64,000 bases of DNA, from positions 186,001 through 250,000 of IMG/VR virus record IMGVR_UViG_3300049215_000771. The stretch is one strand, 5' to 3'. This document shows, in pieces, positions 6,868 to 56,009 of the stretch (positions are counted from its first letter, which is position 1; each line of letters begins with the position of its first letter). The position numbers and the translations under genes were made by a program. The notes beneath the pieces were generated by a model. That model saw nothing but the letters and a program-made list of their open reading frames with translations, was not told where the DNA came from and ran no database searches.

Positions 6868-7099
6868 TGCCGCTAGAACAAACTCCATCAAGATAGCCTG
6901 CGAATACTGCGCCAGCGTCGTGTGGGTCGTACCTCGCAATCTCATCATCAAGGAAAAGAAAAATGCCAAGATTGCTTGTACGAAATGCGCCCGCAGGCTG
7001 GTGAAGGAAGAAATCGACAAGGGTGAGGAAGTGTTTGAAATTCCTGCCGCCCCTGTTGCCGAGAAACTGCTGAAGGAAGAAAAACTGTCGAATGGCTAA
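6803..7099 (+). CDS. hypothetical zinc-finger protein
   Basis: CEYC...W..P...CTKC; same spacing as 61426-61713. Confidence 0.6.
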   Translation: MSQEPETSLLVCKNLEQLSEADAARTNSIKIACEYCASVVWVVPRNLIIKEKKNAKIACTKCARRLVKEEIDKGEEVFEIPAAPVAEKLLKEEKLSNG

Positions 7100-7107
7100 A
7101 TAATGCC

Positions 7108-7860
7108 ATGAGAACTTTCAGGCAGTATCATCAGTGGCGGGAAGCCTTCCTTGGCGCAGGTAATTCATACCATCCTGACGGAAACAGTGGTGGACAACCA
7201 CCACCAGACCGAACCTCCGAGTACATCCCGCCCCTGCCGCCTGGAGGCCCACCCCGCCCAGGACCGCATGGCACGATACAAGATGGCGATTTCCTCCGCA
7301 AGCTGTTGGCGATATTGACCAAAATAGATGCCTTCCGGGACGACAGAATTACTCCCAGCGGAGCCAGTGTGCGAGGCATGGCCGGCACACCTGATTATAT
7401 GTCCCCGGAGATGGGACAACGGACACAATCGCCCGGAGGTTTTGAAGAAGAAAACGAACACGATGACCTGGAATCTTTCCTGGTCAACGGGGCACGCATT
7501 TTCCCCGAAGTTGCAGCCGAGGCCCAGCAAGTCATGCGAGCCTGGTTGCAGTTTCGGAATTTGTTCCTTCCTGCCCTGCATAGTCGTTACACCCAACAGG
7601 AACAACAACAAAACTATCTCTACTACAAGGTCACACTCAGAAACTACAACAATGTGACCCCGTTATTGAAGGAATTGGATAAACTCATCATGGGCGAGAG
7701 CGGCCAGCACAACCCCGCTATCTCGACCAACTGGACCGCATTTATCCAGCAATGGCGGCGACTCGCCCCAAAACTGGCCGGGATGCTCAACCAGGCAATG
7801 GCAGAACACCCGAATCCATACCAGGCCGAGCCTATACAAATGACGCAAGACGTGGTATAA
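7108..7860 (+). CDS. putative virion/internal head protein
   Basis: CTAAATA-N5-ATG upstream; N-terminus MRTFRQYHQWRE. Confidence 0.6.
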   Translation: MRTFRQYHQWREAFLGAGNSYHPDGNSGGQPPPDRTSEYIPPLPPGGPPRPGPHGTIQDGDFLRKLLAILTKIDAFRDDRITPSGASVRGMAGTPDYMSPEMGQRTQSPGGFEEENEHDDLESFLVNGARIFPEVAAEAQQVMRAWLQFRNLFLPALHSRYTQQEQQQNYLYYKVTLRNYNNVTPLLKELDKLIMGESGQHNPAISTNWTAFIQQWRRLAPKLAGMLNQAMAEHPNPYQAEPIQMTQDVV

Positions 7861-7880
7861 TCCCCATCATCGGAGTGATT

Positions 7881-8273
7881 ATGGAAACGGTCAGCGATTT
7901 TCTCAGTGCCCATCGGGATGAAGTCAGCACCGCTTTGAATGAAGTGGGCGGCTGGCGTGGCTTGTTTGACCCTTACTGTGCCGAATGGCAGGAGGCTGAC
8001 CTTCGCCAGAAAGCCGGCGTGCTGCGTTTGCTGATGCAGCATCGCACATTCCCTCAACTTGTTGCTATCTTTCTCAACTCCGAGAGAAGGGAATACATCC
8101 GACAAGATGTGCCATGCGCTATCTTCAAGTTGATGGATCACCTGCCCGAAGCCAAGGAATTTTTCCTCAACGACCCGATTTGCGTCAACAGTGTGTACCA
8201 CGAGTGCCTGACGAGAAAACTCGATGCTGAAAGATGGACAGCACCAGCACGGCCATCAGATAACCACACTTGA
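7881..8273 (+). CDS. hypothetical protein
   Basis: GGAG SD. Confidence 0.65.
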   Translation: METVSDFLSAHRDEVSTALNEVGGWRGLFDPYCAEWQEADLRQKAGVLRLLMQHRTFPQLVAIFLNSERREYIRQDVPCAIFKLMDHLPEAKEFFLNDPICVNSVYHECLTRKLDAERWTAPARPSDNHT

Positions 8274-8511
8274 AGTTGAGAATGATGGGCTGATTCTCGT
8301 AGCCCTCCACTTCAGAACTGGTTGTTCTGTCCTTGGCAAAATGCTTCGCCCTGAAGATTCCGTGCCCGTAGAATTAGTCTTGGAGGATGCAGACCCCAAT
8401 CTTGCAACCGTTGTTTGCGGCGCTTGCAAGCAGAAATTGGGAAAATGCAAAGTAAAACAACAAAATGTTCAAATCGGTAGGAAGACTTCGGTACAGCCCG
8501 AAGCTGAATAA
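8224..8511 (+). CDS. hypothetical protein
   Basis: ORF, Cys-rich; start uncertain. Confidence 0.5.
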   Translation: MLKDGQHQHGHQITTLEVENDGLILVALHFRTGCSVLGKMLRPEDSVPVELVLEDADPNLATVVCGACKQKLGKCKVKQQNVQIGRKTSVQPEAE

Positions 8512-15058: not shown

Positions 15059-15092
15059 CTGGCTTACATGCTACGATTGCTACATACTCTAC

Positions 15093-15458
15093 ATGAAAGC
15101 TACAAGGAACAAACGCAAGCGAGACAAACGACGGAAGTATCGTAACATCCGTATCCAAAGCCCCGCTAACAAGTGGACCCAACTTGAAGCCATCTTGGAT
15201 CATTGCAAAGAAGCCCTCGCCTATGCCTCCAAGAACAACGACTGGAATAACCTCGACTGGCCCCCAGGTTGGTCCTACGAGAAGTGGCGCTTCCTCCGAG
15301 ACTACGCCAGGGAGAAACTGGAAAACCATCACCAAGGTCGCATGAACCGTATCATGGGCGGTCCAAAACAAACCGAAGCCTTCAATGAGTGGCTGTTCGA
15401 TATGTGCGACATACTCCACCATGCTCGCCAAGAAGGAATCTTGCCCGACGAAAGGTGA
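15093..15458 (+). CDS. hypothetical protein
   Basis: CTACATA-N6-ATG upstream. Confidence 0.6.
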   Translation: MKATRNKRKRDKRRKYRNIRIQSPANKWTQLEAILDHCKEALAYASKNNDWNNLDWPPGWSYEKWRFLRDYAREKLENHHQGRMNRIMGGPKQTEAFNEWLFDMCDILHHARQEGILPDER

Positions 15459-16807: not shown

Positions 16808-16823
16808 GAAGCTACATAAAGTC

Positions 16824-17555
16824 ATGAAGACTTTCTACGAATGGCTGCACGAAGCGAAATCAGCTAACATAGGACAAACTCCCGCCCAGCCTGCGCCCCA
16901 AGCAAAACCACCAGTAGCAAAACCATCAGTAGCAAAACCACAACCAATTAACCACGGTTATAACAAACCACAAGCCCCAGCCCCACAACCACAGCAACAA
17001 GCCCCAGCCCCAGCCCCAGCCCCACAAGCCCCAGCCCCAGCCCCAGCCCCACAACCACAGCAACAGCCCGCACAGCAGCCACAACAAGGGTCTGCGGGAA
17101 CCGCACCAGATGGCGAGCCGCTGGTGAAAACTCCCGATGGGAAAATCATCAGAAGTTCTGCTGTGTCCAATGCTATCTTCCAGCAATTTGATGAGTTGCT
17201 GAAAAAGAACGCTGATGGTTTCATCAAGAACAAAATAACCGATCCAATGCAACACCAGGGCTTCCAGAAACAAGTACAACAACTCATCAGCAAATGGAAC
17301 CTGCCGCCAGACCAGGCCAAACAAGTCCAAGATCAAATCTTCGGACCCCAAGGCTGGTACTACAAAGGACGTGGCGGACTCGGCGGAAATACCCTCGCCT
17401 TCATCCAACAATCCATCCAAGACCCTACAGCCTTCACAGGCGATAAAGGTGCAGCACAACGACAACAGCAGCAACAACAGCAAGTCCCCGTTGCCCAGGT
17501 AGCCCCACCCCAGCCTCAGAAAAAGTCCTGGATGAGTAGCTGGTTCGGCGGCTAA
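16824..17555 (+). CDS. Pro/Gln-rich putative internal head protein
   Basis: CTACATA-N5-ATG; N-terminus MKTFYEWLHE. Confidence 0.7.
   Translation: MKTFYEWLHEAKSANIGQTPAQPAPQAKPPVAKPSVAKPQPINHGYNKPQAPAPQPQQQAPAPAPAPQAPAPAPAPQPQQQPAQQPQQGSAGTAPDGEPLVKTPDGKIIRSSAVSNAIFQQFDELLKKNADGFIKNKITDPMQHQGFQKQVQQLISKWNLPPDQAKQVQDQIFGPQGWYYKGRGGLGGNTLAFIQQSIQDPTAFTGDKGAAQRQQQQQQQVPVAQVAPPQPQKKSWMSSWFGG
16973..17085 (+). repeat. coding tandem repeats (CCCCAG)n encoding AP/QP linker
   Basis: GCCCCAGCCCCA runs. Confidence 0.8.
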
Positions 17556-23675: not shown

Positions 23676-23725
23676 TCCCCCAAGGCCAGGCCCAAATCCT
23701 GGCCCACTCCTGCGTACATATCAAC

Positions 23726-24040
23726 ATGAGCAGCTACTACCCACTCGATTCACAGAAGAAAGCCTCCTACCTCACTCCACCCGTCCAGGTTATCTACAAA
23801 TCCCCTCAACCTACCAAAAACTCCCCCAACCTCGCCCCTACCTACTCCCAACAGCCTAACAGCCCTATGATCTTCTTCCAAGGCTGCGACCCCCAATCAC
23901 GCACCGGAGCCTGGCTGCCCTTCAATACCAGTAGGTTCTTCAACCCCACACTCCAAGGCAACTGTGACCCACTCCCACCAAAATTCACTCCCTACAACAC
24001 CGTCGCCCCTATCTCCCCGCCACGCATCAATAGCTTGTAG
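23726..24040 (+). CDS. hypothetical Pro-rich protein
   Basis: GTACATA-N5-ATG. Confidence 0.5.
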   Translation: MSSYYPLDSQKKASYLTPPVQVIYKSPQPTKNSPNLAPTYSQQPNSPMIFFQGCDPQSRTGAWLPFNTSRFFNPTLQGNCDPLPPKFTPYNTVAPISPPRINSL

Positions 24041-24070
24041 AAAATTAACTCGAAGTAAATATCTACCTGC

Positions 24071-24658
24071 ATGATCCAACTGCGGTTCAAATTGTGGCTC
24101 GAATTGTTCGATAGAAGCAGTGGCAAACCCCTCACCGGCACCTGGAAACCACCCCTCCAAAGCCCTCCTATCAACAGACAATACAAATATGTCTTCAACC
24201 TCGACTCCGATCCCACCAAAGACTGCCGGGGCCAACCTTGTTTTTGGGTCAACTTCTACGAAAATTACGACGGAGTATACACCGTCACCTTCGGTCATGC
24301 CGAAACCAAATTCCAGGACCGCTCCACAATCAATAAACAAATCCATCAACAAACAGGCACCGACCCAGGTATCGAAATGATGGGAACTGTCATGAGGGTC
24401 ATGGAGGAATTCGTCAACCAAAAACAACCTGTCGGCTTCTCCTGGACAGGCGTTAAGAAATCTACCCCAGGCGCTATCAACACCGACGCCAGAGCTAAAG
24501 TCTATGACCTGTGGGCCAGAAAAACCCTCGCAGGGAAATACACCAAATACCAAGGCATCTGGCTGCGCAATGATGTCTACGAGAAAGAAAGAACTAAACC
24601 CCCTACCCCACCCGACCACCTGACCCCTCTCGAATGGCCCGATGATGAAGAAATATAG
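24071..24658 (+). CDS. putative virion protein
   Basis: TAAATA upstream; N-terminus MIQLRFKLWLE. Confidence 0.6.
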   Translation: MIQLRFKLWLELFDRSSGKPLTGTWKPPLQSPPINRQYKYVFNLDSDPTKDCRGQPCFWVNFYENYDGVYTVTFGHAETKFQDRSTINKQIHQQTGTDPGIEMMGTVMRVMEEFVNQKQPVGFSWTGVKKSTPGAINTDARAKVYDLWARKTLAGKYTKYQGIWLRNDVYEKERTKPPTPPDHLTPLEWPDDEEI

Positions 24659-25864: not shown

Positions 25865-25928
25865 ATCACCACCAAAACACAATGCCAACATCCAACAACA
25901 AACAGAAACAAATTCACTACATAACCTC

Positions 25929-26279
25929 ATGCCCCTGCAATCGTTCACCACCTGGCTCACTGAAAACCAAAAACAACGTATCCAGTTCGCCGGCTGGTTC
26001 AAAGATGGTACTGTTATCGTCTACCTCAATGGCATCCGTCATGTCTATATCACCGACGCCATCTACCACGAACGCTGGAAAGCACTCAGTAAGCGTAATC
26101 CCATGCTCGTAATGTCCCAAATCGCTCAACTCGTCCGTGCCGGCCACGCCCAACAAACTGAACCACCATCCGTGTCCAGAAAACCTATCCAACCCCCTAA
26201 CCCAAAACCTGTCATCAAACAGCCTAGCTTGTTCGATAACGAGGACGATCAGGAAAACGACCACCAACACACCTTGTAG
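25929..26279 (+). CDS. putative virion protein
   Basis: CTACATA-N5-ATG; MPLQSFTTWLTE. Confidence 0.6.
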   Translation: MPLQSFTTWLTENQKQRIQFAGWFKDGTVIVYLNGIRHVYITDAIYHERWKALSKRNPMLVMSQIAQLVRAGHAQQTEPPSVSRKPIQPPNPKPVIKQPSLFDNEDDQENDHQHTL

Positions 26280-40562: not shown

Positions 40563-40613
40563 TTCCGAACCTTGCACGCCCAGCGAGGTCTTCCTTGCGA
40601 GGAGGGCAGAACG

Positions 40614-44601: not shown

Positions 44602-44922
44602 ATGACGAATCAAGAAGTCCTGGAACTGGCAACCTTGCGTCAACGTGGTCAAGCCGACAGCGATGAAGTGGGCGTTGACATTCGCACGCATCATCCGACG
44701 CTAGGGCATCAGGGCGGGTATCTGACCGTCGATGAAGCCGGCGAGAGTGTCAGCTTCCACTATGACGATCTATGGTTCACTGGCACGGGTTGGGAGTCGG
44801 AAGATAATCTCGGCCTCTACAACGAAGACGGCGACCGCAATGAAGATGCCGAAGTGCCCGAAGTGAGCGCAGCCGAATTCTCCGCTTGGTTCACGGGCGC
44901 TGACTGGAAGCTGCTCAACTAG
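44602..44922 (+). CDS. acidic hypothetical protein
   Basis: GAGG SD after motif A half. Confidence 0.65.
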   Translation: MTNQEVLELATLRQRGQADSDEVGVDIRTHHPTLGHQGGYLTVDEAGESVSFHYDDLWFTGTGWESEDNLGLYNEDGDRNEDAEVPEVSAAEFSAWFTGADWKLLN

Positions 44923-45015
44923 CTGGACAGGCCAGGGCTGACCCGCCCTGGCCCTTGTTGGCGGACAGCACCAGGTACAAACTTTCAAGTTGTAGCTTTA
45001 GACCATTGTACCTTA

Positions 45016-45315
45016 GTGGTCGTCCGACAAACAACTCCCCCTGACGGGGGAAACGCCGAGAGTCAAGAGGGAGGGATCGAAAGTGCCCCCGCAAGGGGCC
45101 GACCCGGAATAAGCGTTGCGGAGTAACCGGATGCAGTCTGCCTGGTCCTAACGGATAATGAGTAGCTACCCCAGGCCAACGCAGTCTCGACGCAAGCGAC
45201 GAAGAAGGGCAATCCTGAAGCCTTGAACGGGCGACTAAGCCGAAAGGCAGTCAGTCACCGGCTTACAACACGGTGCGACGAAGGGAGCAGGCAGGCCGCT
45301 GCTCCCTTCGTTCTT
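45016..45315 (+). ncRNA. candidate ~300-nt structured ncRNA
   Basis: between two motif A copies, no ORF, several GNRA hairpins, terminal 13-bp hairpin. Confidence 0.6.
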
Positions 45316-45409
45316 CAACCCAAGGTCCGGTACAATCCTTCAAGTTGATGATTTAAGCCTTTGTACCCTAACGGCTGTCGCCCGACACCTTCACTCAGGA
45401 GCCTTGACC

Positions 45410-45736
45410 ATGCGTTGCGAAGACTTCCCCTGCTGCGGCCACGAACCCGGTTGCTGCCCGAACTTCGACGAGGCGGGCCGGCAGACCGACATGGTTTGCA
45501 CCTGTGGCGCTCGCCTCCCCATCACGTCTCGCTACTCCATCTGTGAGGCGTGCCTCCGGGCCGGCGACGAGGACTTCGACGAGCCGCCCTTCGACGACGA
45601 GGACTTCGACGACGAGCCGGACCCGTTCCACGGCGACGACGCCGCAGCGGACGCCGATGCCCTGGCCTCCGCTGGCTGGGGCACGGATGAGGACTACGGC
45701 GGATACGAGGACTTCGGCGACTATTGGGGCGATTGA
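45410..45736 (+). CDS. Cys-rich/acidic small protein
   Basis: RCEDFPCCG..CC; DADALASAGWGTDEDYG. Confidence 0.7.
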   Translation: MRCEDFPCCGHEPGCCPNFDEAGRQTDMVCTCGARLPITSRYSICEACLRAGDEDFDEPPFDDEDFDDEPDPFHGDDAAADADALASAGWGTDEDYGGYEDFGDYWGD

Positions 45737-45871
45737 TCGCCTGGCCAGGGCAGCCCAGCCCTGGCCTTTTTTGTTCGGTATAGGCCAGGTACAAACCTTC
45801 AAGTTGATGATTTAAGCCTTTGTACCCTAGTGGGCGGAAGGTCCGAATCTCTCAACCCTGCGAGGTGCGCT

Positions 45872-46660
45872 ATGCAGTTCACGAACTCCCGTACCGGCGA
45901 AGTCATCAACACCAACCTGGACCGTGCGGGCATCCTGGCCGCTTTCGGCGAAGTCGCTCAGGCCGATAGCTGGTTGTGGTATTGGCTGGTCAAGACCATC
46001 AACGATGCGGCCAGCGCCGCCGGCAACAAGGACATGATCGCTTTCCTGGCCGATTCCTTCGTGTTCGCCGTGGGCATGGGCTTGAAAGCCCCCATGATTC
46101 GCCTGGGCTTCCAGGAGCGCCGCTACAAGATTTACCTCTCCCGTCGTGGTACACTGTGCTTCAAGTCGGGCGCTGTCCGGCCTGGCACGTCCGATCCCAT
46201 CGGCGATGAGGAATACGTCGGCTGCCTGTATCAAGGGCGCTTCCTGCCCAACAAGGAGCGCCGCCCGCTGGCCGTGGAAAACGAATTCTTCGCTCGCCTG
46301 AGCGCCGACCCGGTTGGCTTCATGGCCGCTTGCTCGAAAGACATGAATCGCTGTTGCTACTGCAACCTCCCCCTGGAGGATGAGCGTAGCAAGGAAGTCG
46401 GCTACGGCAAGATTTGTGCAGAGCGCTGGGGCTTGCCCTGGGGCAAGGGCAGCGGCTCTCACGTCGTCAGCTTCGCCCAGCTTTGGGAACGGGCTGGCAC
46501 GACGGAAGCCCGCAACATCAGGGGCTTGTGCCAGGCCATTCGCCAGCAACCCCGCCAGGAAGAACTCTGGCTTATCCTGGGCGATGCCCTGGAGGAAGCG
46601 GGCTGGACCGGCAAGAAGCCGCAAGCCCCGCAGGGCAGCGTAGTCGTGCCCGCCCTGTAA
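45872..46660 (+). CDS. DUF6011-like zinc-binding protein with C-terminal TIGR02996-like domain
   Basis: CCYC..PL.D.RS...GYG.ICA..WGLPWG; L..AIR..P..E..WL.L.D.LEE.G. Confidence 0.65.
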   Translation: MQFTNSRTGEVINTNLDRAGILAAFGEVAQADSWLWYWLVKTINDAASAAGNKDMIAFLADSFVFAVGMGLKAPMIRLGFQERRYKIYLSRRGTLCFKSGAVRPGTSDPIGDEEYVGCLYQGRFLPNKERRPLAVENEFFARLSADPVGFMAACSKDMNRCCYCNLPLEDERSKEVGYGKICAERWGLPWGKGSGSHVVSFAQLWERAGTTEARNIRGLCQAIRQQPRQEELWLILGDALEEAGWTGKKPQAPQGSVVVPAL

Positions 46661-46771
46661 CGCTGAAGGGGGCTGACTTCATGTCAGCCCCCTTTTCTTC
46701 AACCTGTTGCTTTAGGCATTTGTACCTTAGTGGTTGTCGCCCGACACACTCAACACTGCGAGGTCAGAATC

Positions 46772-47164
46772 ATGGGCATCCGTCTCTACCCGAACACGAA
46801 GAACGTCGCCTCCCTGGAAACCATCTGCGGCGTGCCCGCTGGCACGGCTGCCCGCCTGGAGGCCGTGGAAGCCCGCCACGCCGAAGAGTTGAAGCCGCTG
46901 GCCGGCAAAGCCCCCTGGGAGCGCCAGGACGTTGAATATCGCCAGTGGTGCGAAATCAACGATGATGCGGCGCTGGGCGATTACCACGCCTTCCTGTTGT
47001 ACGGTTGGGGCAAATTCAACGACCCGCACGGCGTTACGGTGCGGGACGGCGAGCGCACCTGTTCGGGAAGCGTCAGCGATCCCGTCAAGGTCGTGCTGCT
47101 GTTGCGACCGAACGGGCTGGACGAAACGCACCTGGCCCTGATGGAAGGGGTTCACTGGTGCTGA
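46772..47164 (+). CDS. hypothetical protein
   Basis: GAGG SD after motif A half. Confidence 0.7.
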   Translation: MGIRLYPNTKNVASLETICGVPAGTAARLEAVEARHAEELKPLAGKAPWERQDVEYRQWCEINDDAALGDYHAFLLYGWGKFNDPHGVTVRDGERTCSGSVSDPVKVVLLLRPNGLDETHLALMEGVHWC

Positions 47165-47273
47165 GTCACCAGGCCGCAGGGGGCTTCAACCCCCTGCGGC
47201 TTTTTTAGTCCGACTTCTTTAGACCATTGTACCCTAGTGGTTGTCGCCCGACACCTTCAACCCGGAGAGTTCG

Positions 47274-47618
47274 ATGAAGCGTTTCACCCTGTCCGCCCTC
47301 GCCCTGCTCGCCATCGCCATCGCCGCCGTCCTGTTCTTCGTCAAGCCGCTCGGCAACAACAGCGCCAGCGCTCAGTCGCCCGTCGTGGCGCAGCCGCTCG
47401 TTGCCAACACCAGCGCCACCACGAGCGCCACGCCGATCACGCCGGCGCAGTATCATGCCCAGCGGATCGCCCAGCAGCAAGCCGCCGCAGCGCAACAGCG
47501 TATCATCGGCCTGCAACGGGCGCAGATTCGCAACGCCCAGCAGCAAGAGGCGCAACAGCGCTTCTTGAACTATCGCTGGGCATTGCAACAGCAGCGCTTG
47601 CAACGTGGTCAACCATGA
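47274..47618 (+). CDS. secreted/membrane-anchored Gln-rich protein
   Basis: N-terminal signal/TM segment. Confidence 0.6.
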   Translation: MKRFTLSALALLAIAIAAVLFFVKPLGNNSASAQSPVVAQPLVANTSATTSATPITPAQYHAQRIAQQQAAAAQQRIIGLQRAQIRNAQQQEAQQRFLNYRWALQQQRLQRGQP

Positions 47619-47627
47619 TGCAATGAT

Positions 47628-47662
47628 AAGCGCTCAGCGCCATGCAAAGGCGCTGAGCGCTT
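47628..47662. terminator. 14-bp inverted repeat at convergent block boundary
   Basis: AAGCGCTCAGCGCC-N7-GGCGCTGAGCGCTT. Confidence 0.75.
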
Positions 47663-47875
47663 TAGACTTTGGCTGTTGCAAAACTAACAATCAAACAATT
47701 CCGATGCAAAAAGTTTAGACCTTAGTATCATCCCCGGCCCCCGTATACGCAATGACGGCCCATCTTCTTATTTGTTGCAAAGATTTTCCGGCCCGCCAGG
47801 GAAAATGATTGCCAAGGGGCCAAAATTCTCGATTTTGCGGCTTTGCAAAAATACAGCCGGCGATATTTTTCTGGC

Positions 47876-48637
47876 CTACAGGGATTCGAGGTAGTCGGCG
47901 AAGGTCCGCAATCGAGGCCACAAGAAAGGATTGAACAACATGCTCCCCACCGCCACATGATCGGCCCCGGCCCGAACATAATCCTTCACGTCCTGCAAAC
48001 ACGTCACCCCGCCACCCCCGATCAACGTCACTCGCCTGCCAAACTTGGCCCGGAAATTCTCGACAGCTACCAACGAAATTTTCTTCAGGGGCTTGCCGGA
48101 CTTCCCGCCCGCCTCACAAGGGATCGTGTTGCACAGATGGAAATAGCGAATGCCCTGGTCGAATAATGCCACCCCATCTTCCACAGGGCTGACCGGCGAC
48201 AACTTGGCAATGATCGTCTGCTTGAATCCATTGATGGTTCGGATGGGTAGATGATGAACTTTCTCGACAGCAGTGATGTTGGGACAAGAAAGATTCAACT
48301 CCACAGGCACATCCAACAACTTCGCCGTTTCCAACAAGTGAACCCACTCGTTGATGTTGAACCCGTGAATGCTCAAAATGCAGTCTTCAGGAACTCGATG
48401 CGTCCACAGGCCATAGTACCAGTGCTTCTTCCACAGGGAATGGATGCCGGGATTGGGCAGGCCCAGCTTGTTGACCCAGGACTGTTCCTGGAAGTTATAA
48501 CGAACGGTCGTGAGAATTTTCCAGACCCGCCACCAGAACCCACCACGATTCTGAACGGTATAAGTTCCCAGCGTTGGCGTGGCGTGACGGAAATGCAAGT
48601 AGTTGCCGAAGGGCGCAGACACGATCAGTTTCTTCAT
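47876..48637 (-). CDS. pyrD: dihydroorotate dehydrogenase-like FMN oxidoreductase
   Basis: N..GL.NPG; LN.SCPN; KLSP; NT...GG.SG.PL; IG.GGV......GAD.V.VGS. Confidence 0.8.
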   Translation of the reverse strand: MKKLIVSAPFGNYLHFRHATPTLGTYTVQNRGGFWWRVWKILTTVRYNFQEQSWVNKLGLPNPGIHSLWKKHWYYGLWTHRVPEDCILSIHGFNINEWVHLLETAKLLDVPVELNLSCPNITAVEKVHHLPIRTINGFKQTIIAKLSPVSPVEDGVALFDQGIRYFHLCNTIPCEAGGKSGKPLKKISLVAVENFRAKFGRRVTLIGGGGVTCLQDVKDYVRAGADHVAVGSMLFNPFLWPRLRTFADYLESL

Positions 48638-49981: not shown

Positions 49982-51232
49982 TCACCAACCCCGCCCGCCT
50001 CTCGATACTAAGTTAGAAACGTAGACCGAAACTTTCGATAGGTCAACACTAGGCTCGAACTTGATCGACGTACCGTAATGATTGCCCCCAGGAACCATGT
50101 AAGTAAGCGATACATAAGTTTTTGTTTTCTTCACGTCAATCTTCGCCCCACTTTGCGCCGCCAACTTGCCCACCCCAGGTGCCTCCGATGTACCAAAATC
50201 TTTCCCAATGGCACCACTCCAGCCGGGTTCCCCAATGTTCCTAACTAACATCCGATAGGCTGGCAAAGTTTCAGCCCCACCCGTAACCAACAATTCCAAC
50301 AATTTTGCGAAACGACGTGGGCCGGCATTTCTACGGGCAGCTTTCTCGAACATAGAGAGGACGAGTTCAGGTCTTTCCGAATCTTCGTAGAGAGGGTTAG
50401 TGAGAATGTCCTTGAGTGCCTTGATGTTTTTACCTCCCAACAGGGCGTAGGATTTGCCGAGGCCGAAGCTGCGCACTTCGATCTGTGTCTCGGTGACGGC
50501 CTTGAGAGAGAAGCCCAGGGAGGAGCGGTCGGCCCCTGCTGCGGAGGAGCAAATGAGGCGCAGGTCGGCGGTGTCGGATTTGAGTTTACCGGCTCCAGCG
50601 CCCCAGCCTGCCCCACCCAGGAACTCGATGGAGTCGATGATGCAGGCCCGAATCAAGGCCGAAGATTTCTGGAAGATCAACTCGCCCATACCTCCACTGC
50701 CACCGCCCGCATGAATCCTGATGAATTCACAAACCAACTTGCCGAGATTGGGGTCTTTCAACTTGGTGGCAATCTCCCCTTCCAGGCGAGTTTTTTCCGC
50801 CGTGGCCGAGGCCAGATTCATGGTGCCGACAGGACTCAATTTGTGGGTGTTCAGAAGATACAAAAACACTTCAATCTCGAACAGGAGGCCCATCTCCTTG
50901 CCCACGACGGAAGGCAGAGATTTCTTGCCTGCATCCATCGCCTTCTCAAACGACGCCTTCTCCGCAGGCTTCCAGTGTCCGATCTGGCCAGCAATGGCTC
51001 CCGTCGCTGCCGGTCCCTTCCAACCCTTCTGTGTGATTTCTACCAAATCTCCGGGATGGACGACGCTGGCCGCAAGACGCATGGGAGTAGGCGCTGCCAT
51101 CTCGTCGGCGATCTTGGGGAAGGTAATACTCACATACCCCTCTCCTGTCGAGAAACGTACCCCTTGTTTGAGCCGGGTCACAAATGGCATTAGCTCCGCA
51201 TCAACACCAACAAATTCTTTGAATTGAAACAT
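49982..51232 (-). CDS. putative virion protein
   Basis: CTAAATA-N5-ATG; MFQFKEFV. Confidence 0.65.
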   Translation of the reverse strand: MFQFKEFVGVDAELMPFVTRLKQGVRFSTGEGYVSITFPKIADEMAAPTPMRLAASVVHPGDLVEITQKGWKGPAATGAIAGQIGHWKPAEKASFEKAMDAGKKSLPSVVGKEMGLLFEIEVFLYLLNTHKLSPVGTMNLASATAEKTRLEGEIATKLKDPNLGKLVCEFIRIHAGGGSGGMGELIFQKSSALIRACIIDSIEFLGGAGWGAGAGKLKSDTADLRLICSSAAGADRSSLGFSLKAVTETQIEVRSFGLGKSYALLGGKNIKALKDILTNPLYEDSERPELVLSMFEKAARRNAGPRRFAKLLELLVTGGAETLPAYRMLVRNIGEPGWSGAIGKDFGTSEAPGVGKLAAQSGAKIDVKKTKTYVSLTYMVPGGNHYGTSIKFEPSVDLSKVSVYVSNLVSRGGRGW

Positions 51233-51240
51233 GCAGATAT

Positions 51241-51690
51241 TTAGCACAAGCACGAAATCTTCTTGGAGTTCTTCAGGTAATCATCCACCCGGTTATCCAT
51301 GTTGCCACGGGCCACAATGTTCCGGTCGGCCTCAACCTCGTCCCACCAGTTCTCCCGATACTCCGGGAACGATAAATCAACATCTTCTACGGGTTCATCC
51401 TCCGGGAAGATCGCCTCGTGCGCAAACATCAAGTCGGGAGGCAACTCGCAATACTTTGGATCGTATGCCAACGACTTGCGGATCGGTTCTTCATTTTTTA
51501 CGTCCGGCCCCACAATCCCAAAGTAAGAAGGACAATCTTTCCATAACTTCTTCTGCTCAGGTTCGTTCAACCAGCGAGCAAACTCCTCGTCACTCATTAC
51601 TTCAAGCCAGTGACGAAACTCCGCTATGTTCTCAGGATTCAATGACTGCGTGACACACATATTGAACATGCCAGGAACACAAAATGCCAT
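51241..51690 (-). CDS. hypothetical protein (F(M/A)H paralogue family)
   Basis: CELPPDLMFAHEAIF ... RVDDYL. Confidence 0.65.
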   Translation of the reverse strand: MAFCVPGMFNMCVTQSLNPENIAEFRHWLEVMSDEEFARWLNEPEQKKLWKDCPSYFGIVGPDVKNEEPIRKSLAYDPKYCELPPDLMFAHEAIFPEDEPVEDVDLSFPEYRENWWDEVEADRNIVARGNMDNRVDDYLKNSKKISCLC

Positions 51691-51711
51691 AACTACCTCC
51701 TACATAATCAC

Positions 51712-52167
51712 ATGAACTTCAAACATTGGCTACACACCGAAGAAGCCCAACCTATCCAGCCCGCACAAGTTCAACAAATTCTTTCTGCGCATCGTGGACC
51801 CCTCAATACAGGGAATATCAGAACCGACCTCCTGGTAAGTGCCGCCAACCGAGGCGAACACATTATGTTCGATCAAGACTTCCCAATCACAAACATCGGA
51901 CGGCGCATCCAAGGGTATGATATGAATCATGTCATGACAATGATAAACACCATCTTCAAAACCATCGGCCTGCCCGCCATCCAAGATCGTACCCAAATCC
52001 AACCCCAAACAATCCAACCTCATATCGAACAAATCAAAGAAGCCCTGCCGCCCCTCATCGTGTCCCTCATGCCCGATGAATCGTACCACCTGGATGATGG
52101 CAACCATCGCCTGGGTGTCGCTAGAACTCTTGGCCTCCAAACCGTCAAAGCCTTCATCATTCAATAA
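51712..52167 (+). CDS. ParB/sulfiredoxin-like domain protein, putative virion protein
   Basis: PP.IV......Y...DGNHR..A...G...V.A; CTACATA-N5-ATG; MNFKHWLHTEE. Confidence 0.7.
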   Translation: MNFKHWLHTEEAQPIQPAQVQQILSAHRGPLNTGNIRTDLLVSAANRGEHIMFDQDFPITNIGRRIQGYDMNHVMTMINTIFKTIGLPAIQDRTQIQPQTIQPHIEQIKEALPPLIVSLMPDESYHLDDGNHRLGVARTLGLQTVKAFIIQ

Positions 52168-52621
52168 GATCAATCAACCACGGATCGTCAATACTACGGT
52201 ATTTATGCTGTTTGGAAAGATTTTTACCAGGTTCCAGTACAGCTTCGATTTGAACGAGTTTGTAGGAGGAGCCGACCTGGAGGATGCCCTGGTCGTCCAC
52301 TCGTCCGTTGCCGACGCCGACCATTTTGAAGCCAACGCCGTTGGGGTTATAGTTGAGGACGGACTGAAGGGTTTGGCCTGCGGGGGTGGAGAGGATTTTA
52401 ACTTCGGCCATGAGTTTATCGTCATCCATCCACAATTTTTCGATGGAGTGGGAGACATTGGTGAAGTGGATGATGGAATCCGTAACGGGGCCGAGTTCGC
52501 ACAACATGCCCCGGCCATCAATGATAGGTTTGAGCCGATCCACCTGTGCCTGGAGAAGTTCCTTGCTATAAACACGATTGGTCGGCGTTACCTTATCAGC
52601 GACACAAACAGTAACGATCAT
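52157..52621 (-). CDS. T4 gp21-like prohead protease paralogue, probably inactive
   Basis: N.RVY....L ... EL ... VSH.I..L ... KIL.TP.G; catalytic SSRG replaced by KMVG; ends YRSIDDPW. Confidence 0.7.
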   Translation of the reverse strand: MIVTVCVADKVTPTNRVYSKELLQAQVDRLKPIIDGRGMLCELGPVTDSIIHFTNVSHSIEKLWMDDDKLMAEVKILSTPAGQTLQSVLNYNPNGVGFKMVGVGNGRVDDQGILQVGSSYKLVQIEAVLEPGKNLSKQHKYRSIDDPWLIDLIE

Positions 52622-52630
52622 ACGCACTCC

Positions 52631-53038
52631 TTATGTACTGTCACGCAGATAGCGTTTTACTTTCTCCGTGGCGGGCAATCTATCATCGTACTGGCGAAGG
52701 TAATCGTTGTCATCCAGGACCGGGATGTAATACTCATCATTTTTGCCCCAACGTGCCCCTTCTTCCTTGGCAGAAAATGTCGTGTCCCACGAGGAATTGT
52801 CCCCGGAATCGAACACGGCATTGTGCATGAACAAGGTTTCGGCGGCGAAGGGCAACTCACCTGTTTGCAGGGACTTCAGCAGCGCCTCCTTCACTTCCAG
52901 ACAGTACGCATCCGTGTCGAACATCCGTTGGTCCTCCCGAATCCAGGTTTTGGGTCGGCCCGGCTTGTTGTCCATCTGGTATGGAGGTTTGCTGTAGTCC
53001 GACTCCTTCACTTCCTGGATGTATTTCTCTTCCGCCAT
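52631..53038 (-). CDS. hypothetical protein (F(M/A)H paralogue family)
   Basis: ELPFAAETLFMHNAVF ... KVKRYL. Confidence 0.6.
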   Translation of the reverse strand: MAEEKYIQEVKESDYSKPPYQMDNKPGRPKTWIREDQRMFDTDAYCLEVKEALLKSLQTGELPFAAETLFMHNAVFDSGDNSSWDTTFSAKEEGARWGKNDEYYIPVLDDNDYLRQYDDRLPATEKVKRYLRDST

Positions 53039-53669
53039 CTTCCCCTCCTAACATCACCCCAATTTCTTCTGGCGGCAACATGGTAACAATGGTAGCAATC
53101 TGGCCCAAGTCCAATGGCTCGCCCGGCTCTTCTTCCGTCCCCAAACTGTCGTAGTAGGCACGAGCCGCCGCACACGAAGCATACAACTCCGGTTCGTTCA
53201 AACCTACACAAGCACAAGCCGCATGACCCGGCCCGACATAATCCAAAAACATCTGCTCCAACAACTCCTCCGCTAACTGCTGCGCCCGCTCCTGACTCCG
53301 ATCCCGGCCCCGCAACCACCCCAATCCCCACTCGGAGAACATCTGGTTGGTCACAGTGTTCAAGGCGCAAACAATTCCAAAGGCTTGTCGCTGTGCCAAG
53401 GTCGGAACAACAACTTCTACCTCCTGAAGCAACTTCATCTCCTTGGAAACAAACCGATAATCGTATTTCAACTTGTCGGCCCCAAGTTCGGCCAGCCAAA
53501 CACGGGGATTCTTGTACTGGTCCGTGCCCGGATTCATCAGCAGGGCAACCAAAGGGTGGTCATAACAAAGAAACCAGTAGTTTGGATTCTCCTCCGTGAA
53601 AGAAGTCCCCACCGCCCACTGGCGACCGAGCCAGTCCTTGCCGTCGCTATTCGTTGTGAAGTAGTACAT
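52857..53669 (-). CDS. conserved phage hypothetical protein
   Basis: HPL.A...NP ... Q...F.I.CA ... W...WL.G.DRS; 3' end overlaps next gene. Confidence 0.6.
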   Translation of the reverse strand: MYYFTTNSDGKDWLGRQWAVGTSFTEENPNYWFLCYDHPLVALLMNPGTDQYKNPRVWLAELGADKLKYDYRFVSKEMKLLQEVEVVVPTLAQRQAFGIVCALNTVTNQMFSEWGLGWLRGRDRSQERAQQLAEELLEQMFLDYVGPGHAACACVGLNEPELYASCAAARAYYDSLGTEEEPGEPLDLGQIATIVTMLPPEEIGVMLGGEDGGREIHPGSEGVGLQQTSIPDGQQAGPTQNLDSGGPTDVRHGCVLSGSEGGAAEVPANR

Positions 53670-53689
53670 ATCGCATTATACATACCTGC

Positions 53690-54337
53690 ATGAAAAAATA
53701 TCTTGCCTCCATCTTGTTTGTCGCCGCTCTCCTGGCCCTTATCATCGGTCGTGCCTTCATCGACACCACCCACCCCGACGCCTACGAAAATCAAGGCTTT
53801 GAATTCATCGCCCAACCCGACAACATCACCTGCGGCCCCACCAGCACCACCATGCTGCTCAAATACTACGGCAAAGATGTTACCATCGCCCAGGTCGAGA
53901 AAGAAACCCGCACCAAATGGTTTCACTGGAAAGGAGAAGACATCGGTATGACCGCCCCGGAATATGTAGAAATCGCCCTCCGTCGCTTTGGCGTCCCCGC
54001 CAAAATGCAACGAGGTAGTTTCAACAACCTCAAACATTATGTTTCCCAGGGCCGTCCCGTCATCGTCAACGTCCGCTCCGGGCAAACTACCTGGCATTAC
54101 GTCGTTGTCATCGGCTACACTAACGATCAAGTTATCTTGGCTGATCCCGGCGATGGCGCTCGGATCACCATCTCCGCTGAGAATTTCCTTGGTTGTTGGT
54201 CGTTCCAGACAGATATGGATGGAACTGTTTGCGGGCATTCTGATCCGCTGTGGGGGCGAGTCGATCCACTCAAAGATTTGCTGTGGGCTGGTGAAGTGTA
54301 CCCCTACACCATGATCGTACCGGAAAGGAAGAAATGA
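53690..54337 (+). CDS. C39-like cysteine peptidase, membrane anchored
   Basis: Q.....CGPTS..MLL.YYG; HYVVV.GY; L.DP. Confidence 0.8.
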   Translation: MKKYLASILFVAALLALIIGRAFIDTTHPDAYENQGFEFIAQPDNITCGPTSTTMLLKYYGKDVTIAQVEKETRTKWFHWKGEDIGMTAPEYVEIALRRFGVPAKMQRGSFNNLKHYVSQGRPVIVNVRSGQTTWHYVVVIGYTNDQVILADPGDGARITISAENFLGCWSFQTDMDGTVCGHSDPLWGRVDPLKDLLWAGEVYPYTMIVPERKK

Positions 54338-54352
54338 CCACTATATACCAGC

Positions 54353-55228
54353 ATGAGGAAAGAATGGATTCTTATCCTGGTTCTGGTTCTCGGTATTGGA
54401 TTCGCCTACCAGCACAAGATGAAGCAAAGGCAAACCCAAGTACCGCCCGCCCAGGTTCCGCCTGTACCGACACTGCCAGTCCAGCCCCCAACAAACCCTA
54501 CACCCCCACAACCACCCAGCCGCCCGCCTGTCGTTGTAGACATCATCAACTGGCCCGCCGTGCGCCAGGTCAGTCCTGATGGTATTGGCAGCGTCCTGGC
54601 CGATATAGACAGCCATATGCCTGCGGGCCATCAATATCGGGCTGCCAACAAGATTACCTGGGCACACGAAACCACGCACGGTATCAACGCCAATATCCGA
54701 AACAAACACTTCCAAAGTGGCCGGAAAGTCAACGCTTTCTACGTCCTCCAGAACCGAGCCATCGTGGTGGAGGAACCCAAAACCACCATCGCTGCCGTTG
54801 CCAACAATGTGCCGCAGTCCTGGAAGGGAACTTGCTACCAACTCTACTTGGTTCAGCAAAGGAGTGGCTGGAACAATGAACCTCTCTACCTGTGTGATGA
54901 ATGGGTTGCGTACACAAATGGGGCCGCTTGTAGGAAAGATTTGAACATGGAGGACGGGGCCAGTGAGATGGAATTTACTTGCGAGTTCACGGGCTATGTG
55001 CTGTCCCTGACTTATACCATCAAGCAAAATTGTCCGAATTACGACGACAAGCAGTTCAAGGCGTTCGTGATGTGGAGTGTAGAAAGGACAATGCAGATAT
55101 ACAACAACGAAAGTGGGGCTAATACCCGCCTGACAGCTATCCGTACAGCCCCGGATGGCGAGACTATTAGACAATTCGCCCGTTCCTATTTCGGTACGGA
55201 TTGGTGTAAGGAAGTATTGGGATTCTAG
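54353..55228 (+). CDS. membrane-anchored HExxH metalloprotein
   Basis: TM segment, Pro linker, WAHETTHG. Confidence 0.65.
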   Translation: MRKEWILILVLVLGIGFAYQHKMKQRQTQVPPAQVPPVPTLPVQPPTNPTPPQPPSRPPVVVDIINWPAVRQVSPDGIGSVLADIDSHMPAGHQYRAANKITWAHETTHGINANIRNKHFQSGRKVNAFYVLQNRAIVVEEPKTTIAAVANNVPQSWKGTCYQLYLVQQRSGWNNEPLYLCDEWVAYTNGAACRKDLNMEDGASEMEFTCEFTGYVLSLTYTIKQNCPNYDDKQFKAFVMWSVERTMQIYNNESGANTRLTAIRTAPDGETIRQFARSYFGTDWCKEVLGF

Positions 55229-55938
55229 GCAGTACGGCGTAGAAGTCGATTGGCGTAACTGTCCATATCTTCCGAGCTACGCTGGCGTGGTGTGGAAGCG
55301 TAGTTGAACACATCATCAGCGTCGTTCCAGCGGCTTAACTGATCTTGCCGGTCCTTGGTGACGCTGGCCCGCTTGTTGTTCATAGCTCGTTGATGATCGT
55401 CTACTTGTCCCCGCATCATATTGGCGTGGCTTTGTCCGAAGCGTTGAACGTCTTTACGGAACGAATCTTTACGGACCAGCTTGCTACCCATTTGGGCGTA
55501 GGGTTGTTTCGATTGGCGGTTGACTACGGATACGACAAGTCGCATTAGCGAGTCTGAGGTAAGCTGACCCCTGCTGGCGGTATTGCCTTGCATAATCACT
55601 GCGAATTCATCCCAAACCTGAAAGAGTCTTTGGCAATCCAGGTGTCCGGGGTTGCGTTCGAGGATGAATTTACCGATGGCCCCGGCAACCAGTTTCATAA
55701 GTTGGGGGATGTTGTCCTTGATTTGGCTCCAGAACTCGTTGTCTCCACGGTTGCTGATGAAGGATCGGTCGCCGGGGAGGGATACGGATGCGCCGTCGCC
55801 TTCAGGATGGAAGACGAGGAAGTAGCCGAATTTGGTTTTGAATTGGGGGCTGTGGGCTGTGATAGCTCCACCCTGATCTTGGAGGGTGATGGAGTTGTCA
55901 GTCATTCTCTCAGCGATTTCGAGCCATAAACTAAACAT
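55225..55938 (-). CDS. putative virion protein
   Basis: CTAAATA-N4-ATG; MFSLWLEIAE. Confidence 0.6.
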   Translation of the reverse strand: MFSLWLEIAERMTDNSITLQDQGGAITAHSPQFKTKFGYFLVFHPEGDGASVSLPGDRSFISNRGDNEFWSQIKDNIPQLMKLVAGAIGKFILERNPGHLDCQRLFQVWDEFAVIMQGNTASRGQLTSDSLMRLVVSVVNRQSKQPYAQMGSKLVRKDSFRKDVQRFGQSHANMMRGQVDDHQRAMNNKRASVTKDRQDQLSRWNDADDVFNYASTPRQRSSEDMDSYANRLLRRTA

Positions 55939-56009
55939 GCCATATTTAGCCCTCCCTGGAAGATTTTCTGACCAGGGTGAATTTAATACCGTGGGGCATG
56001 TAGGAACAA

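What the first reader, a model, noticed from the sequence alone, without database searches (positions are those of the whole stretch)
7096..55949. Leaderless late-gene signal: TA(A/C/T)ATA exactly 5 nt before ATG
A T4-late-promoter-like box (T4 gp55 reads TATAAATA) sits 5 nt upstream of ATG with no SD at 7096, 16812, 23714, 25917, 51244(-), 51700, 53678 and 54341. Variants occur at 55949(-) (4 nt), 15080 (6 nt) and 24055. The fixed spacing puts the expected start site at or next to the ATG, implying a late regulon translated from leaderless mRNAs. These genes are scattered singly among unrelated genes on both strands.
Basis: partly seen in the sequence, partly recalled or inferred. Interest (0 to 1): 0.7.

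Follow-up and report, generated by a model that had tools for sequence, protein, structure and literature searches.

The report
Leaderless promoter box, capsid-tagged phage genes
In a 533-kb phage genome, a short box resembling the phage T4 late promoter sits exactly five bases before the start codon of dozens of genes. About half of these genes encode unrelated proteins that share a T4-like "pack me into the capsid" N-terminal tag, so they look like a set of packaged proteins made from leaderless mRNAs. Transcript starts and timing have not been measured.

Summary
TANATA-N5-ATG occurs 9 times in the window, against 0.28 expected. It occurs 37 times in the 532,729-bp phage genome, against about 5 for any other spacing. 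The same spike at N5 appears in two related huge-phage contigs and, 3-fold over control, in GenBank LR756511.

The box behaves like a promoter, not a ribosome site:
- It is concentrated in non-coding DNA.
- It also occurs 15-40 nt upstream of genes that carry a normal Shine-Dalgarno (SD) sequence.
- Its core and geometry match published T4-type late promoters (TATAAATA at -13 to -6; CTAAATA from -12 in phage Aeh1). This puts +1 on the A of ATG.
- N5 sites have no SD, a pyrimidine at -1, and essentially only ATG starts.
- Some sites follow an intrinsic terminator directly.
- The genome encodes a 179-aa sigma with region 2 only, whose best family is that of T4 gp55.

New here: about half of the N4-6 genes encode non-homologous proteins with an N-terminal tag, M-x(1-4)-F-(R/K)-(E/Q)-W-L-x3-E. 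This resembles the T4 capsid-targeting sequence MKTYQEFIAE. The phage has a gp21-type prohead protease and a gp23-type capsid protein.

Start sites, late timing and packaging remain unproven. Verdict: new variant of a known kind.

The parts
7097..7110 (+). TAAATA box, 5-nt spacer, ATG of a 250-aa ORF (7108-7860) with a CTS-like N-terminus (MRTFRQYHQWRE)
   Evidence: no Pfam or PHROG family
16813..16826 (+). TACATA box, N5, ATG of a 243-aa ORF (16824-17555) with a CTS-like N-terminus (MKTFYEWLHEAK)
23715..23728 (+). TACATA box, N5, ATG of a 104-aa P/Q/S-rich ORF (23726-24040) with no tag. A GC-rich inverted repeat (no T-run) lies just upstream.
25918..25931 (+). TACATA box, N5, ATG of a 116-aa ORF (25929-26279) with a CTS-like N-terminus (MPLQSFTTWLTE)
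51230..51243 (-). TAAATA box, N5, ATG of a 416-aa ORF (49982-51232, minus) with a CTS-like N-terminus (MFQFKEFVGVDAE). The G001 ortholog keeps box and tag.
51701..51714 (+). TACATA box, N5, ATG of a 151-aa ORF (51712-52167) with a CTS-like N-terminus (MNFKHWLHTEE)
53679..53692 (+). TACATA box, N5, ATG of a 215-aa Peptidase_C39-like protein with a hydrophobic N-terminus (53690-54337). A second TACATA lies 14 nt upstream, at 53665.
54342..54355 (+). TATATA box, N5, ATG of a 291-aa protein with an N-terminal membrane helix (54353-55228). RNA contigs of three samples start 23-39 nt inside the ORF and none lies upstream.
56268..56281 (-). TAGATA box, N5, ATG of an 86-aa basic ORF (56010-56270, minus).
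55936..55948 (-). TAAATA box, 4-nt spacer, ATG of a 237-aa ORF (55225-55938, minus) with a CTS-like N-terminus (MFSLWLEIAE)
15081..15095 (+). TACATA box, 6-nt spacer, ATG of a 121-aa basic ORF (15093-15458)
24056..24073 (+). TAAATA box, 9-nt spacer, ATG of a 195-aa ORF (24071-24658) with a CTS-like N-terminus (MIQLRFKLWLELFD)
52628..52637 (-). Leadered version: TACATA followed by AGGAG and, 10 nt after the box, the ATG of ORF 52157-52627 (minus)

Best explanation
The window is part of a 533-kb phage genome with a T4-type head module.

Inferred: (c)TANATA is the -10-type element of a phage-specific promoter class. Host core RNA polymerase most likely reads it with the phage's 179-aa sigma, which has region 2 only and resembles T4 gp55, without a -35 element.

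Inferred from published T4/Aeh1 geometry: the last A of the box lies at -6. Where the box is followed by 5 nt (sometimes 4) and ATG, transcription then starts on the A of the start codon, and the mRNA is translated without a leader or SD sequence. Where the box lies 15-40 nt upstream, a normal SD-bearing leader is made.

Shown: the class is strongly enriched for otherwise unrelated, mostly orphan proteins that begin with a conserved tag, M-x(1-4)-F-(R/K)-(E/Q)-W-L-x3-E. This tag resembles the T4 capsid-targeting sequence MKTYQEFIAE.

Inferred: the tag directs these proteins into the prohead core, the gp21-type protease removes it after the Glu, and the mature proteins travel with the DNA into the next host. 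This would make the set a late, virion-directed regulon.
For: Statistics:
- 9 sites in the window against 0.28 expected.
- Genome spacing histogram: 37 at N5 and 15 at N4, against about 5 elsewhere.
- The same spike appears in relatives: G001, 28 at N5 and 21 at N4; G002, 20 at N5. Pattern against reversed control: 28 vs 2, 20 vs 2, and 50 vs 15 in LR756511.

Promoter rather than ribosome site:
- 56% of boxes lie in the 23% of the genome that is non-coding.
- A second class has the box 12-60 nt upstream of ATG with a canonical SD in between. In that class, 70% of sites have a purine 6 nt after the box.
- Ten sites across three genomes follow an intrinsic terminator by 4-19 nt.
- Orthologs switch between the N5/ATG form and an SD-led form that uses GTG or TTG.

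Geometry: the T4 late promoter TATAAATA lies at -13 to -6, and the Aeh1 box CTAAATA begins at -12 (PMC1524935). Here C precedes the box in 68% of N5 sites, and N5 places +1 on the A of ATG.

Leaderless signature:
- No SD.
- At -1, 76% C and 20% T, followed by A.
- 31 ATG, 3 TTG and 0 GTG starts, against 76% ATG in SD genes.
- In 31 of 35 sites no upstream in-frame start has an SD, and in 18 of 35 the ATG is the first start after a stop.
- A TA-like box about 10 bp before the start codon is the accepted signature of leaderless genes (PMC3160421).

Sigma factor: a 179-aa protein whose best PHROG is phrog_234, 'late sigma transcription factor' (E 6e-8). Pfam finds Sigma70_r2 only. The fold matches sigma domain 2. 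There are 265 relatives in IMG/VR. No Rpb2-type RNA polymerase subunit was found.

Tag:
- 25 of 52 N4-6 ORFs carry it, against 38 of 6,844 other ORFs (p = 2e-39).
- G001 gives 18 of 47 (p = 9e-24) and G002 gives 14 of 33 (p = 2e-19).
- The tagged proteins are not homologous to each other.
- The position of F varies from residue 2 to 7, so this is a peptide signal and not a DNA signal.
- Tagged genes without the N4-6 form are still 14-fold enriched for a box 7-60 nt upstream (p = 7e-7).
- The T4 ipII and ipIII N-termini were read from NC_000866.
- A Peptidase_S77 prohead protease (99.6 bits) and a Gp23 capsid protein (289 bits) are present.

RNA: the phage is transcribed in moss metatranscriptomes. 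The MCP gene is 62-86% covered, against 5-9% for the window stretch 50000-56500. At two N5 genes the contigs begin 17-39 nt after the ATG and nothing lies upstream.
Against: - No start site is mapped. Logan contigs carry no strand and are only one or two reads deep at the N5 genes. One contig (window 55924-56074) crosses the ATG of the N4 gene at 55938, which could be read-through from the boxed gene upstream.
- The most abundant late RNA, that of the capsid gene, has a reproducible 5' boundary at genome position 338743 with no TANATA box before it. The box is therefore not the only route to late expression.
- The match of the sigma to gp55 itself is weak. BLASTP gives E 5e-4, hhalign gives probability 0.7%, and phrog_234 also matches ordinary sigma factors in 8 of 14 control genomes.
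- No T4-type sliding clamp was detected, although that search rang nowhere and is uninformative.
- Boxes also precede a DnaB-like helicase (N4) and both ribonucleotide reductase subunits (leadered), which are early or middle genes in T4. Part of the leadered class must be chance, given background rates of 2-6% for similar AT-rich hexamers.
- Packaging and cleavage of the tagged proteins are inferred only. Structure prediction of tag with protease and scaffold gave no verdict.
Confidence: 0.55

Rival explanations
1. The box is a -10 element read by the host's housekeeping sigma, or by the phage's 322-aa sigma with regions 2 and 4. The genes would still be leaderless, but not a gp55-type or late class.
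For: Leaderless genes in many bacteria carry TANNNT about 12 nt before the start codon (PMC3160421). A second phage sigma with regions 2 and 4 exists. Boxes also precede helicase and ribonucleotide reductase genes.
Against: The sixth base is A, not the near-invariant T of sigma-70 -10 elements. TANAAT shows no peak at this spacing: 1 site at spacings 4-6. No -35-like element is seen; there is only a weak purine-rich patch. The core and the preceding C match T4 and Aeh1 late boxes.
Confidence: 0.17
2. The box is an RNA-level signal: a cleavage or processing site for a phage or host endoribonuclease. Cutting longer transcripts there would produce leaderless or short-leader mRNAs.
For: The fixed distance to AUG would also fit a processing site. 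The capsid mRNA shows a sharp 5' boundary without any box, so RNA processing may occur in this phage. Contigs cannot distinguish primary from processed ends.
Against: The box also lies directly after intrinsic terminators, where little precursor RNA would exist. It matches a known DNA promoter family and a cognate type of sigma is encoded. The pyrimidine(-1)/A(+1) pair is typical of transcription initiation.
Confidence: 0.1
3. The box is a non-SD translation-initiation element that the ribosome or a phage-encoded factor recognises on a longer mRNA. It would take the place of the SD at its usual distance.
For: It occupies the position where an SD would lie. The phage invests heavily in translation, with 56 tRNAs and at least two aminoacyl-tRNA synthetases.
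Against: The same box occurs 12-60 nt upstream of genes that have their own SD. The spacing is sharper than that of SD sites. Orthologs that lose the N5 form gain an SD. Boxes are enriched in non-coding DNA generally.
Confidence: 0.07
4. It is a chance or compositional pattern, or a by-product of paralogous gene duplication that carried the 5' end along.
For: AT-rich hexamers are generally concentrated between genes.
Against: 9 sites against 0.28 expected. There is a single-spacing spike in three genomes. The proteins are not paralogs. Spacer bases and position 3 of the box vary freely between sites and between orthologs.
Confidence: 0.01

Closest known systems
T4-type late promoters read by gp55: TATAAATA at -13 to -6, CTAAATA from -12 in Aeromonas phage Aeh1, ATAAATA in jumbo phages CBB and GAP32
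   Same: An AT-rich box ending in ATA with no -35 element. C precedes TA, as in Aeh1. The phage encodes a small sigma with region 2 only. The head genes are of the T4 type.
   Different: Position 3 of the core is free (A, C, T or G) and the two upstream T4 positions are not conserved. Dozens of boxes are placed so that +1 falls on the start codon, whereas the reports of T4-type late promoters read here do not mention such placement. gp33 and gp45 partners were not found or not tested.
T4 capsid-targeting sequence (CTS) of internal proteins IPI-III and Alt
   Same: A 10-15-residue N-terminal peptide shared by otherwise unrelated proteins. The pattern (S/T)-aromatic-x-(E/Q)-aromatic-aliphatic is followed by a Glu, often in an L-x-E context. 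A gp21-family protease (Peptidase_S77) is encoded (PMC3012670, PMC5694885).
   Different: There are about 30-40 tagged genes per genome rather than a handful. The Glu lies 8 residues after the first aromatic residue, not 6. Neither packaging nor cleavage is shown.
Leaderless genes of Actinobacteria and Deinococcus, with TANNNT about 10-12 nt before the start codon
   Same: A -10-type box at a fixed short distance from the start codon, no SD, and a preference for AUG (PMC3160421).
   Different: The box is not TANNNT. It belongs to a phage whose other genes are about 70% SD-led, and it marks a specific functional set rather than a genome-wide habit.
Ejection or inner-body proteins of giant phages (phiKZ, SPN3US), processed by a gp21-like protease
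   Same: Many head-internal proteins with propeptides cut after Glu by a T4-gp21 homolog (PMC5694885).
   Different: Those propeptides are mostly longer than 100 residues and are not a short shared tag. No promoter link has been described for them.

Membership tests
T4-type (gp55-dependent) late promoter | Conserved AT-rich -10-region box (TATAAATA or variants such as CTAAATA) with no -35 element | tested here: met
   The core TANATA is invariant by definition of the search. C at the preceding base is found in 68% of N5 sites. No conserved -35 is seen. The box matches the last 6-7 bases of the T4 and Aeh1 boxes. The first two T4 positions are not conserved.
T4-type (gp55-dependent) late promoter | Box ends at -6 relative to the mapped transcription start | tested here: inconclusive
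   No start site map exists. RNA contigs at two N5 genes begin 17-39 nt after the ATG with nothing upstream, but they are one or two reads deep and unstranded.
T4-type (gp55-dependent) late promoter | Phage encodes a gp55-family sigma (sigma region 2 only, about 180 aa) | tested here: met
   179-aa ORF at genome 413435-413974(-). Best PHROG is phrog_234 (E 6e-8). Pfam finds Sigma70_r2 only. The fold equals sigma domain 2. Direct similarity to T4 gp55 is weak.
T4-type (gp55-dependent) late promoter | Co-activator gp33 and sliding clamp gp45 are required for activation | tested here: inconclusive
   phrog_223 (gp45) gave no hit, but the search rang in no control genome either. gp33 was not searched.
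T4-type (gp55-dependent) late promoter | Active late in infection, upstream of virion and lysis genes | not testable with these tools
   Some boxed genes are a head-tail adaptor, a tail-protein-like gene and a C39 peptidase. Others are a DnaB-like helicase and ribonucleotide reductase. There are no time-course data.
Leaderless mRNA | The primary 5' end coincides with the A of the start codon | tested here: inconclusive
   See the start-site row above. The claim rests on published promoter geometry and on the pyrimidine(-1)/A(+1) pair.
Leaderless mRNA | No SD sequence, and an AUG start codon | tested here: met
   No SD in the 11 nt available. Starts are 31 ATG, 3 TTG and 0 GTG. In 31 of 35 sites no upstream in-frame start has an SD.
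T4 capsid-targeting sequence (CTS) | A short conserved N-terminal peptide on otherwise unrelated proteins | tested here: met
   58 N-termini from three genomes align on F-(R/K)-(E/Q)-W-L-x3-E. The bearers share no other similarity.
T4 capsid-targeting sequence (CTS) | A gp21-family prohead protease is present and cuts after the Glu that ends the tag | tested here: inconclusive
   The protease gene is present (PF03420, 99.6 bits). Glu is found at +8 in 27 of 58 tags and an L-x-E context in about 10 of 58. Cleavage itself is not testable here.
T4 capsid-targeting sequence (CTS) | The tagged protein is found inside the virion | not testable with these tools
   This needs virion mass spectrometry. 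The complex prediction gave no verdict.

The most novel reading that the evidence does not exclude
A widespread clade of huge T4-superfamily phages keeps a large, fast-evolving set of 30-40 orphan proteins per genome. Each carries a T4-like capsid-targeting tag, so that it is packed into the head and injected into the next host. The phage expresses this set from gp55-type promoters that abut the start codon. The mRNAs are therefore leaderless and do not depend on SD/anti-SD pairing. That would keep their translation going late in infection, when the phage (with 56 tRNAs and its own synthetases) or the host has altered the translation apparatus.
Probability: 0.3. Interest if true: 0.75.

Novelty: new variant of a known kind. 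Interest (0 to 1): 0.6.

Why it matters
If the boxes are leaderless gp55-type promoters, they give a simple sequence rule for finding one temporal and functional gene class in uncultured huge phages. At least 265 IMG/VR loci share the sigma. The linked N-terminal tag would then mark dozens of orphan genes per genome as candidate packaged and injected proteins. In T4 that class holds anti-restriction effectors, so this would turn 'hypothetical proteins' into a testable list of host-takeover or counter-defence factors. It would also be a case of a phage using leaderless translation for a defined regulon in a genome that otherwise uses SD. That bears on how large phages with their own translation genes steer the ribosome.

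Tried and rejected
- Alternative genetic code: suppressor-type tRNAs exist (anticodons CTA x3 and TCA), but opening TAG or TGA gave no clear gain and the capsid gene is open in the standard code. The standard code was kept.
- Paralogy of the boxed genes: rejected, with only one weak BLASTP pair among 52.
- Depletion of the box as a word: not seen beyond the general rarity of TA-rich words.
- TSS mapping from public RNA: both read-laying runs returned only Logan contigs. These gave presence and rough 5' limits but no start sites.
- hhalign of the sigma family against the single T4 gp55 sequence: probability 0.7%, uninformative.
- PDB sequence search with the sigma profile: nothing below E 0.09.
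- Foldseek: sigma domain 2 only, and T4 gp55 was not among the top 50.
- Phage RNA polymerase (PF00562) and the T4 clamp (phrog_223): no hits, and the clamp search had no positive control.
- Complex prediction of protease, scaffold and the first 40 residues of a tagged protein: no verdict (score 0.03), so it counts neither for nor against binding.
- Box counts in four shorter relatives (74-89 kb contigs): not distinguishable from the reversed-pattern control.
- Terminator directly upstream: 10 of 132 sites. This is informative as individual cases, but the rate is not significantly above that of SD genes, 24 of 517.

Full report
**What the window is.** The window is bases 186001-250000 of a single 532,729-bp virus record with 52.7% G+C. 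The record carries 56 tRNA genes. It has a T4-type head module: a gp21-family prohead protease (PF03420, 99.6 bits), a Glu/Ala/Lys-rich scaffold-like protein, and a gp23-family major capsid protein (PF07068, 289 bits). A portal gene lies nearby. The nearest GenBank record is the uncultured 595-kb phage LR756511, whose capsid protein is 81.5% identical. Cultured relatives (a 319-kb Stenotrophomonas phage CM1, T4-like cyanophages, Microcystis and Flavobacterium phages) are about 29-44% identical. The DNA comes from moss metagenomes. In a crude gene call, about 70% of genes have a Shine-Dalgarno (SD) sequence (GGAG) 8-11 nt before the start, so the host uses SD.

**The observation.**
- The window holds 9 exact TANATA-N5-ATG matches, against 0.28 expected from shuffles.
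- Genome-wide, the number of TANATA boxes followed by ATG is 37 at spacing 5 and 15 at spacing 4. Every other spacing gives about 3-10.
- 35 N5 and 13 N4 sites open frames of at least 50 codons.
- An unbiased tally of all hexamers at all offsets before ATG finds only the SD sequence and this box. The other top entries come from a 33-bp tandem repeat.

**Promoter or ribosome signal?** Several results point to a DNA promoter.
- 56% of all boxes lie in the 23% of the genome outside my gene calls.
- A second class has the box 12-60 nt upstream of an ATG, GTG or TTG start with a canonical SD in between. TANATA is 3-8 times more frequent at 20-39 nt than close variants such as TANATT, TANATC or CANATA. 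The box is therefore separable from the start codon.
- In that leadered class, the sixth base after the box is a purine in 70% of sites.
- Ten N4-6 sites in three genomes lie 4-19 nt after a GC-rich hairpin plus T-run. This leaves no room for another promoter.
- Among orthologs at 35-67% identity, about half keep the N4-6 form, with a different spacer and a different position 3. Others have an SD-led form, sometimes with a GTG or TTG start.

**Geometry.** The literature puts the T4 late box TATAAATA at -13 to -6. It puts the divergent Aeh1 box CTAAATA from -12 (PMC1524935). Here the consensus is c-TANATA. With five spacer bases, +1 falls on the A of ATG. At N5 sites, position -1 is C in 76% and T in 20%. 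Starts are ATG in 31 of 34 cases, against 76% in SD genes. In 31 of 35 sites, no upstream in-frame start has an SD. A TA-like box about 10 bp before the start codon is the accepted computational signature of leaderless genes (PMC3160421).

**The sigma factor.** A 179-aa ORF at genome 413435-413974(-) has phrog_234, 'late sigma transcription factor', as its best PHROG. That is the family T4 gp55 itself hits at 2.9e-69. The ORF contains only Sigma70 region 2. A model with pLDDT 85 matches sigma domain 2 in solved holoenzymes. The ORF has 265 relatives in IMG/VR. The link to gp55 itself is weak, and phrog_234 also matches ordinary sigma factors in control genomes. A second phage sigma of 322 aa has regions 2 and 4. 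No Rpb2-type polymerase subunit was found.

**What the genes are.** The boxed ORFs are not paralogs, and most have no Pfam or PHROG family. Yet 25 of the 52 N4-6 ORFs begin with M-x(0-5)-F-x2-[WFY]-[LIVMFH] followed by an acidic residue. Only 38 of 6,844 other open ATG frames do so (p = 2e-39). The two large relatives give 18 of 47 (p = 9e-24) and 14 of 33 (p = 2e-19).

Aligned on the Phe, 58 N-termini give (S/T/N)-F-(R/K)-(E/Q)-W-L-x3-E, and about 10 show an L-x-E context. The Phe sits at residue 2 to 7, so the conservation is in the peptide and not in the DNA register. T4 ipII and ipIII, read from NC_000866, begin MKTYQEFIAE. This is the capsid-targeting sequence that loads diverse internal proteins into the prohead core and is removed by gp21 after Glu (PMC3012670, PMC5694885).

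Tagged genes that lack the N4-6 form are still 14-fold enriched for a box 7-60 nt upstream (p = 7e-7). In the window, 7 of the 12 boxed genes carry the tag. The others include a Peptidase_C39-like protein with a hydrophobic N-terminus and a neighbouring membrane protein, which may form a lysis pair.

**RNA.** Moss metatranscriptomes hold the capsid gene almost completely (62-86% of sampled words). They hold only 5-9% of the window stretch 50000-56500. This argues for true transcription and against DNA carry-over.
- At the N5 gene 54353-55228, the left-most contigs of three samples start 23, 32 and 39 nt after the ATG. No run covers the 1.7 kb upstream.
- At the N5 site at genome position 342045, one contig starts 17 nt after the A of the ATG, following 1.9 kb of silence.
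- These data are thin and unstranded. One contig crosses the ATG of the N4 gene at 55938.
- The abundant capsid RNA begins reproducibly at 338743, 100 nt before its ATG, with no box in front. Either another promoter type or RNA processing also operates.

**Timing.** 'Late' rests on analogy. The supporting facts are the T4-like box, the gp55-like sigma, the capsid-directed tag, a head-tail adaptor gene (N5) and the putative lysis genes. Against a strict late class, boxes also precede a DnaB-like helicase (N4) and the ribonucleotide reductase genes (leadered). Given background rates, part of the N4 and leadered sets must be chance.

**Conclusion.** The signal is real and conserved in a clade of huge phages. 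It is best read as a gp55-type promoter placed so that many transcripts are leaderless. It marks a regulon enriched for proteins with a T4-like capsid-targeting tag. The promoter family, leaderless translation and the CTS are each known. Their combination, and the scale of 30-40 tagged orphan genes per genome, is a new variant. Start sites, sigma dependence, timing and packaging all remain to be shown.

Noticed in passing
window 52157-52627 (-); genome 58132-58437, 453363-453812, 517793-518062, 351351-617, 518004, 518192, 351043, 122231 (+): Nine small ORFs (88-157 aa) end in a shared C-terminal tag, K-K-Y-R-S-I-D-D-P-W-(E/Q/S/L). At least four (58132, 453363, 517793, 351351) carry, before the tag, a 40-60-aa fragment of the phage's own major capsid protein, 59-78% identical to it; a fifth tagged ORF (518192) overlaps another such fragment, and a sixth fragment (475757-475584, -) was not checked for the tag. 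The one in the window carries a fragment of the gp21-like prohead protease. Their function is unknown. They could be decoys for capsid-sensing host defences or dominant-negative assembly inhibitors.
   Followed up: partly
whole genome (G000): Several hexamers are almost absent from 533 kb: ACTGGG/CCCAGT (1 occurrence), GGGGGG/CCCCCC (1), TCTGGG/CCCAGA (2) and GAGGTG/CACCTC (3). This looks like avoidance of restriction sites.
   Followed up: no
genome 338743 (outside the window): Abundant capsid-gene RNA in three metatranscriptomes has the same 5' boundary, 100 nt before the ATG and inside the 3' end of the scaffold gene. No TANATA box precedes it. This is either a processing site or another promoter type.
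   Followed up: partly
genome 80837, 121393-121540, 491736: There are three tRNAs with anticodon CTA and one with TCA (suppressor type) among 56 tRNAs. Even so, the capsid gene and the other genes examined are open in the standard code.
   Followed up: partly
window 28000-48000: A 20-kb island of about 60% G+C sits in a genome of about 52%. It is filled with small plus-strand ORFs of good coding score. It includes a RuvB-like AAA ATPase (27574-28665), a DUF6011 protein and a Kyanoviridae Gp96-like protein. It holds no TANATA-N5-ATG site.
   Followed up: partly
window 59364-60536 (-) and 62120-63673 (-): The phage encodes a class I (Trp/Tyr-type) and a class II (Asp/Lys/Asn-type) aminoacyl-tRNA synthetase.
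   Followed up: no
genome 293649-299792 (+): A 2,048-aa ORF behind a TAGATA-N4-ATG box contains dozens of copies (about 50 carry the 9-mer searched) of a 33-bp (11-residue) tandem repeat. It has no PHROG family and may be a fibre-like virion protein.
   Followed up: no
window 53665-53692 (+); genome 337818-337832 and 414021-414025: Boxes sometimes come in tandem or overlapping pairs. Two TACATA boxes lie 14 nt apart before the C39 peptidase gene. TACATAAGGTAAATA lies before the scaffold gene. TATATAGATA lies 50 nt before the gp55-like sigma gene itself.
   Followed up: no
17-20 nt upstream of the box at N5 sites, e.g. window 54320-54330 and 7070-7082: A weak purine-rich patch (GAAGAA/AGAT, 0.4-0.5 bit per position) lies 28-31 nt before the ATG. 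It is too far for an SD sequence. It could be the end of upstream coding sequence or an upstream promoter element.
   Followed up: no
window 53690-55228 (+): A Peptidase_C39-like protein with a hydrophobic N-terminus and an adjacent protein with an N-terminal membrane helix each have their own N5 box. They may form a lysis cassette.
   Followed up: no
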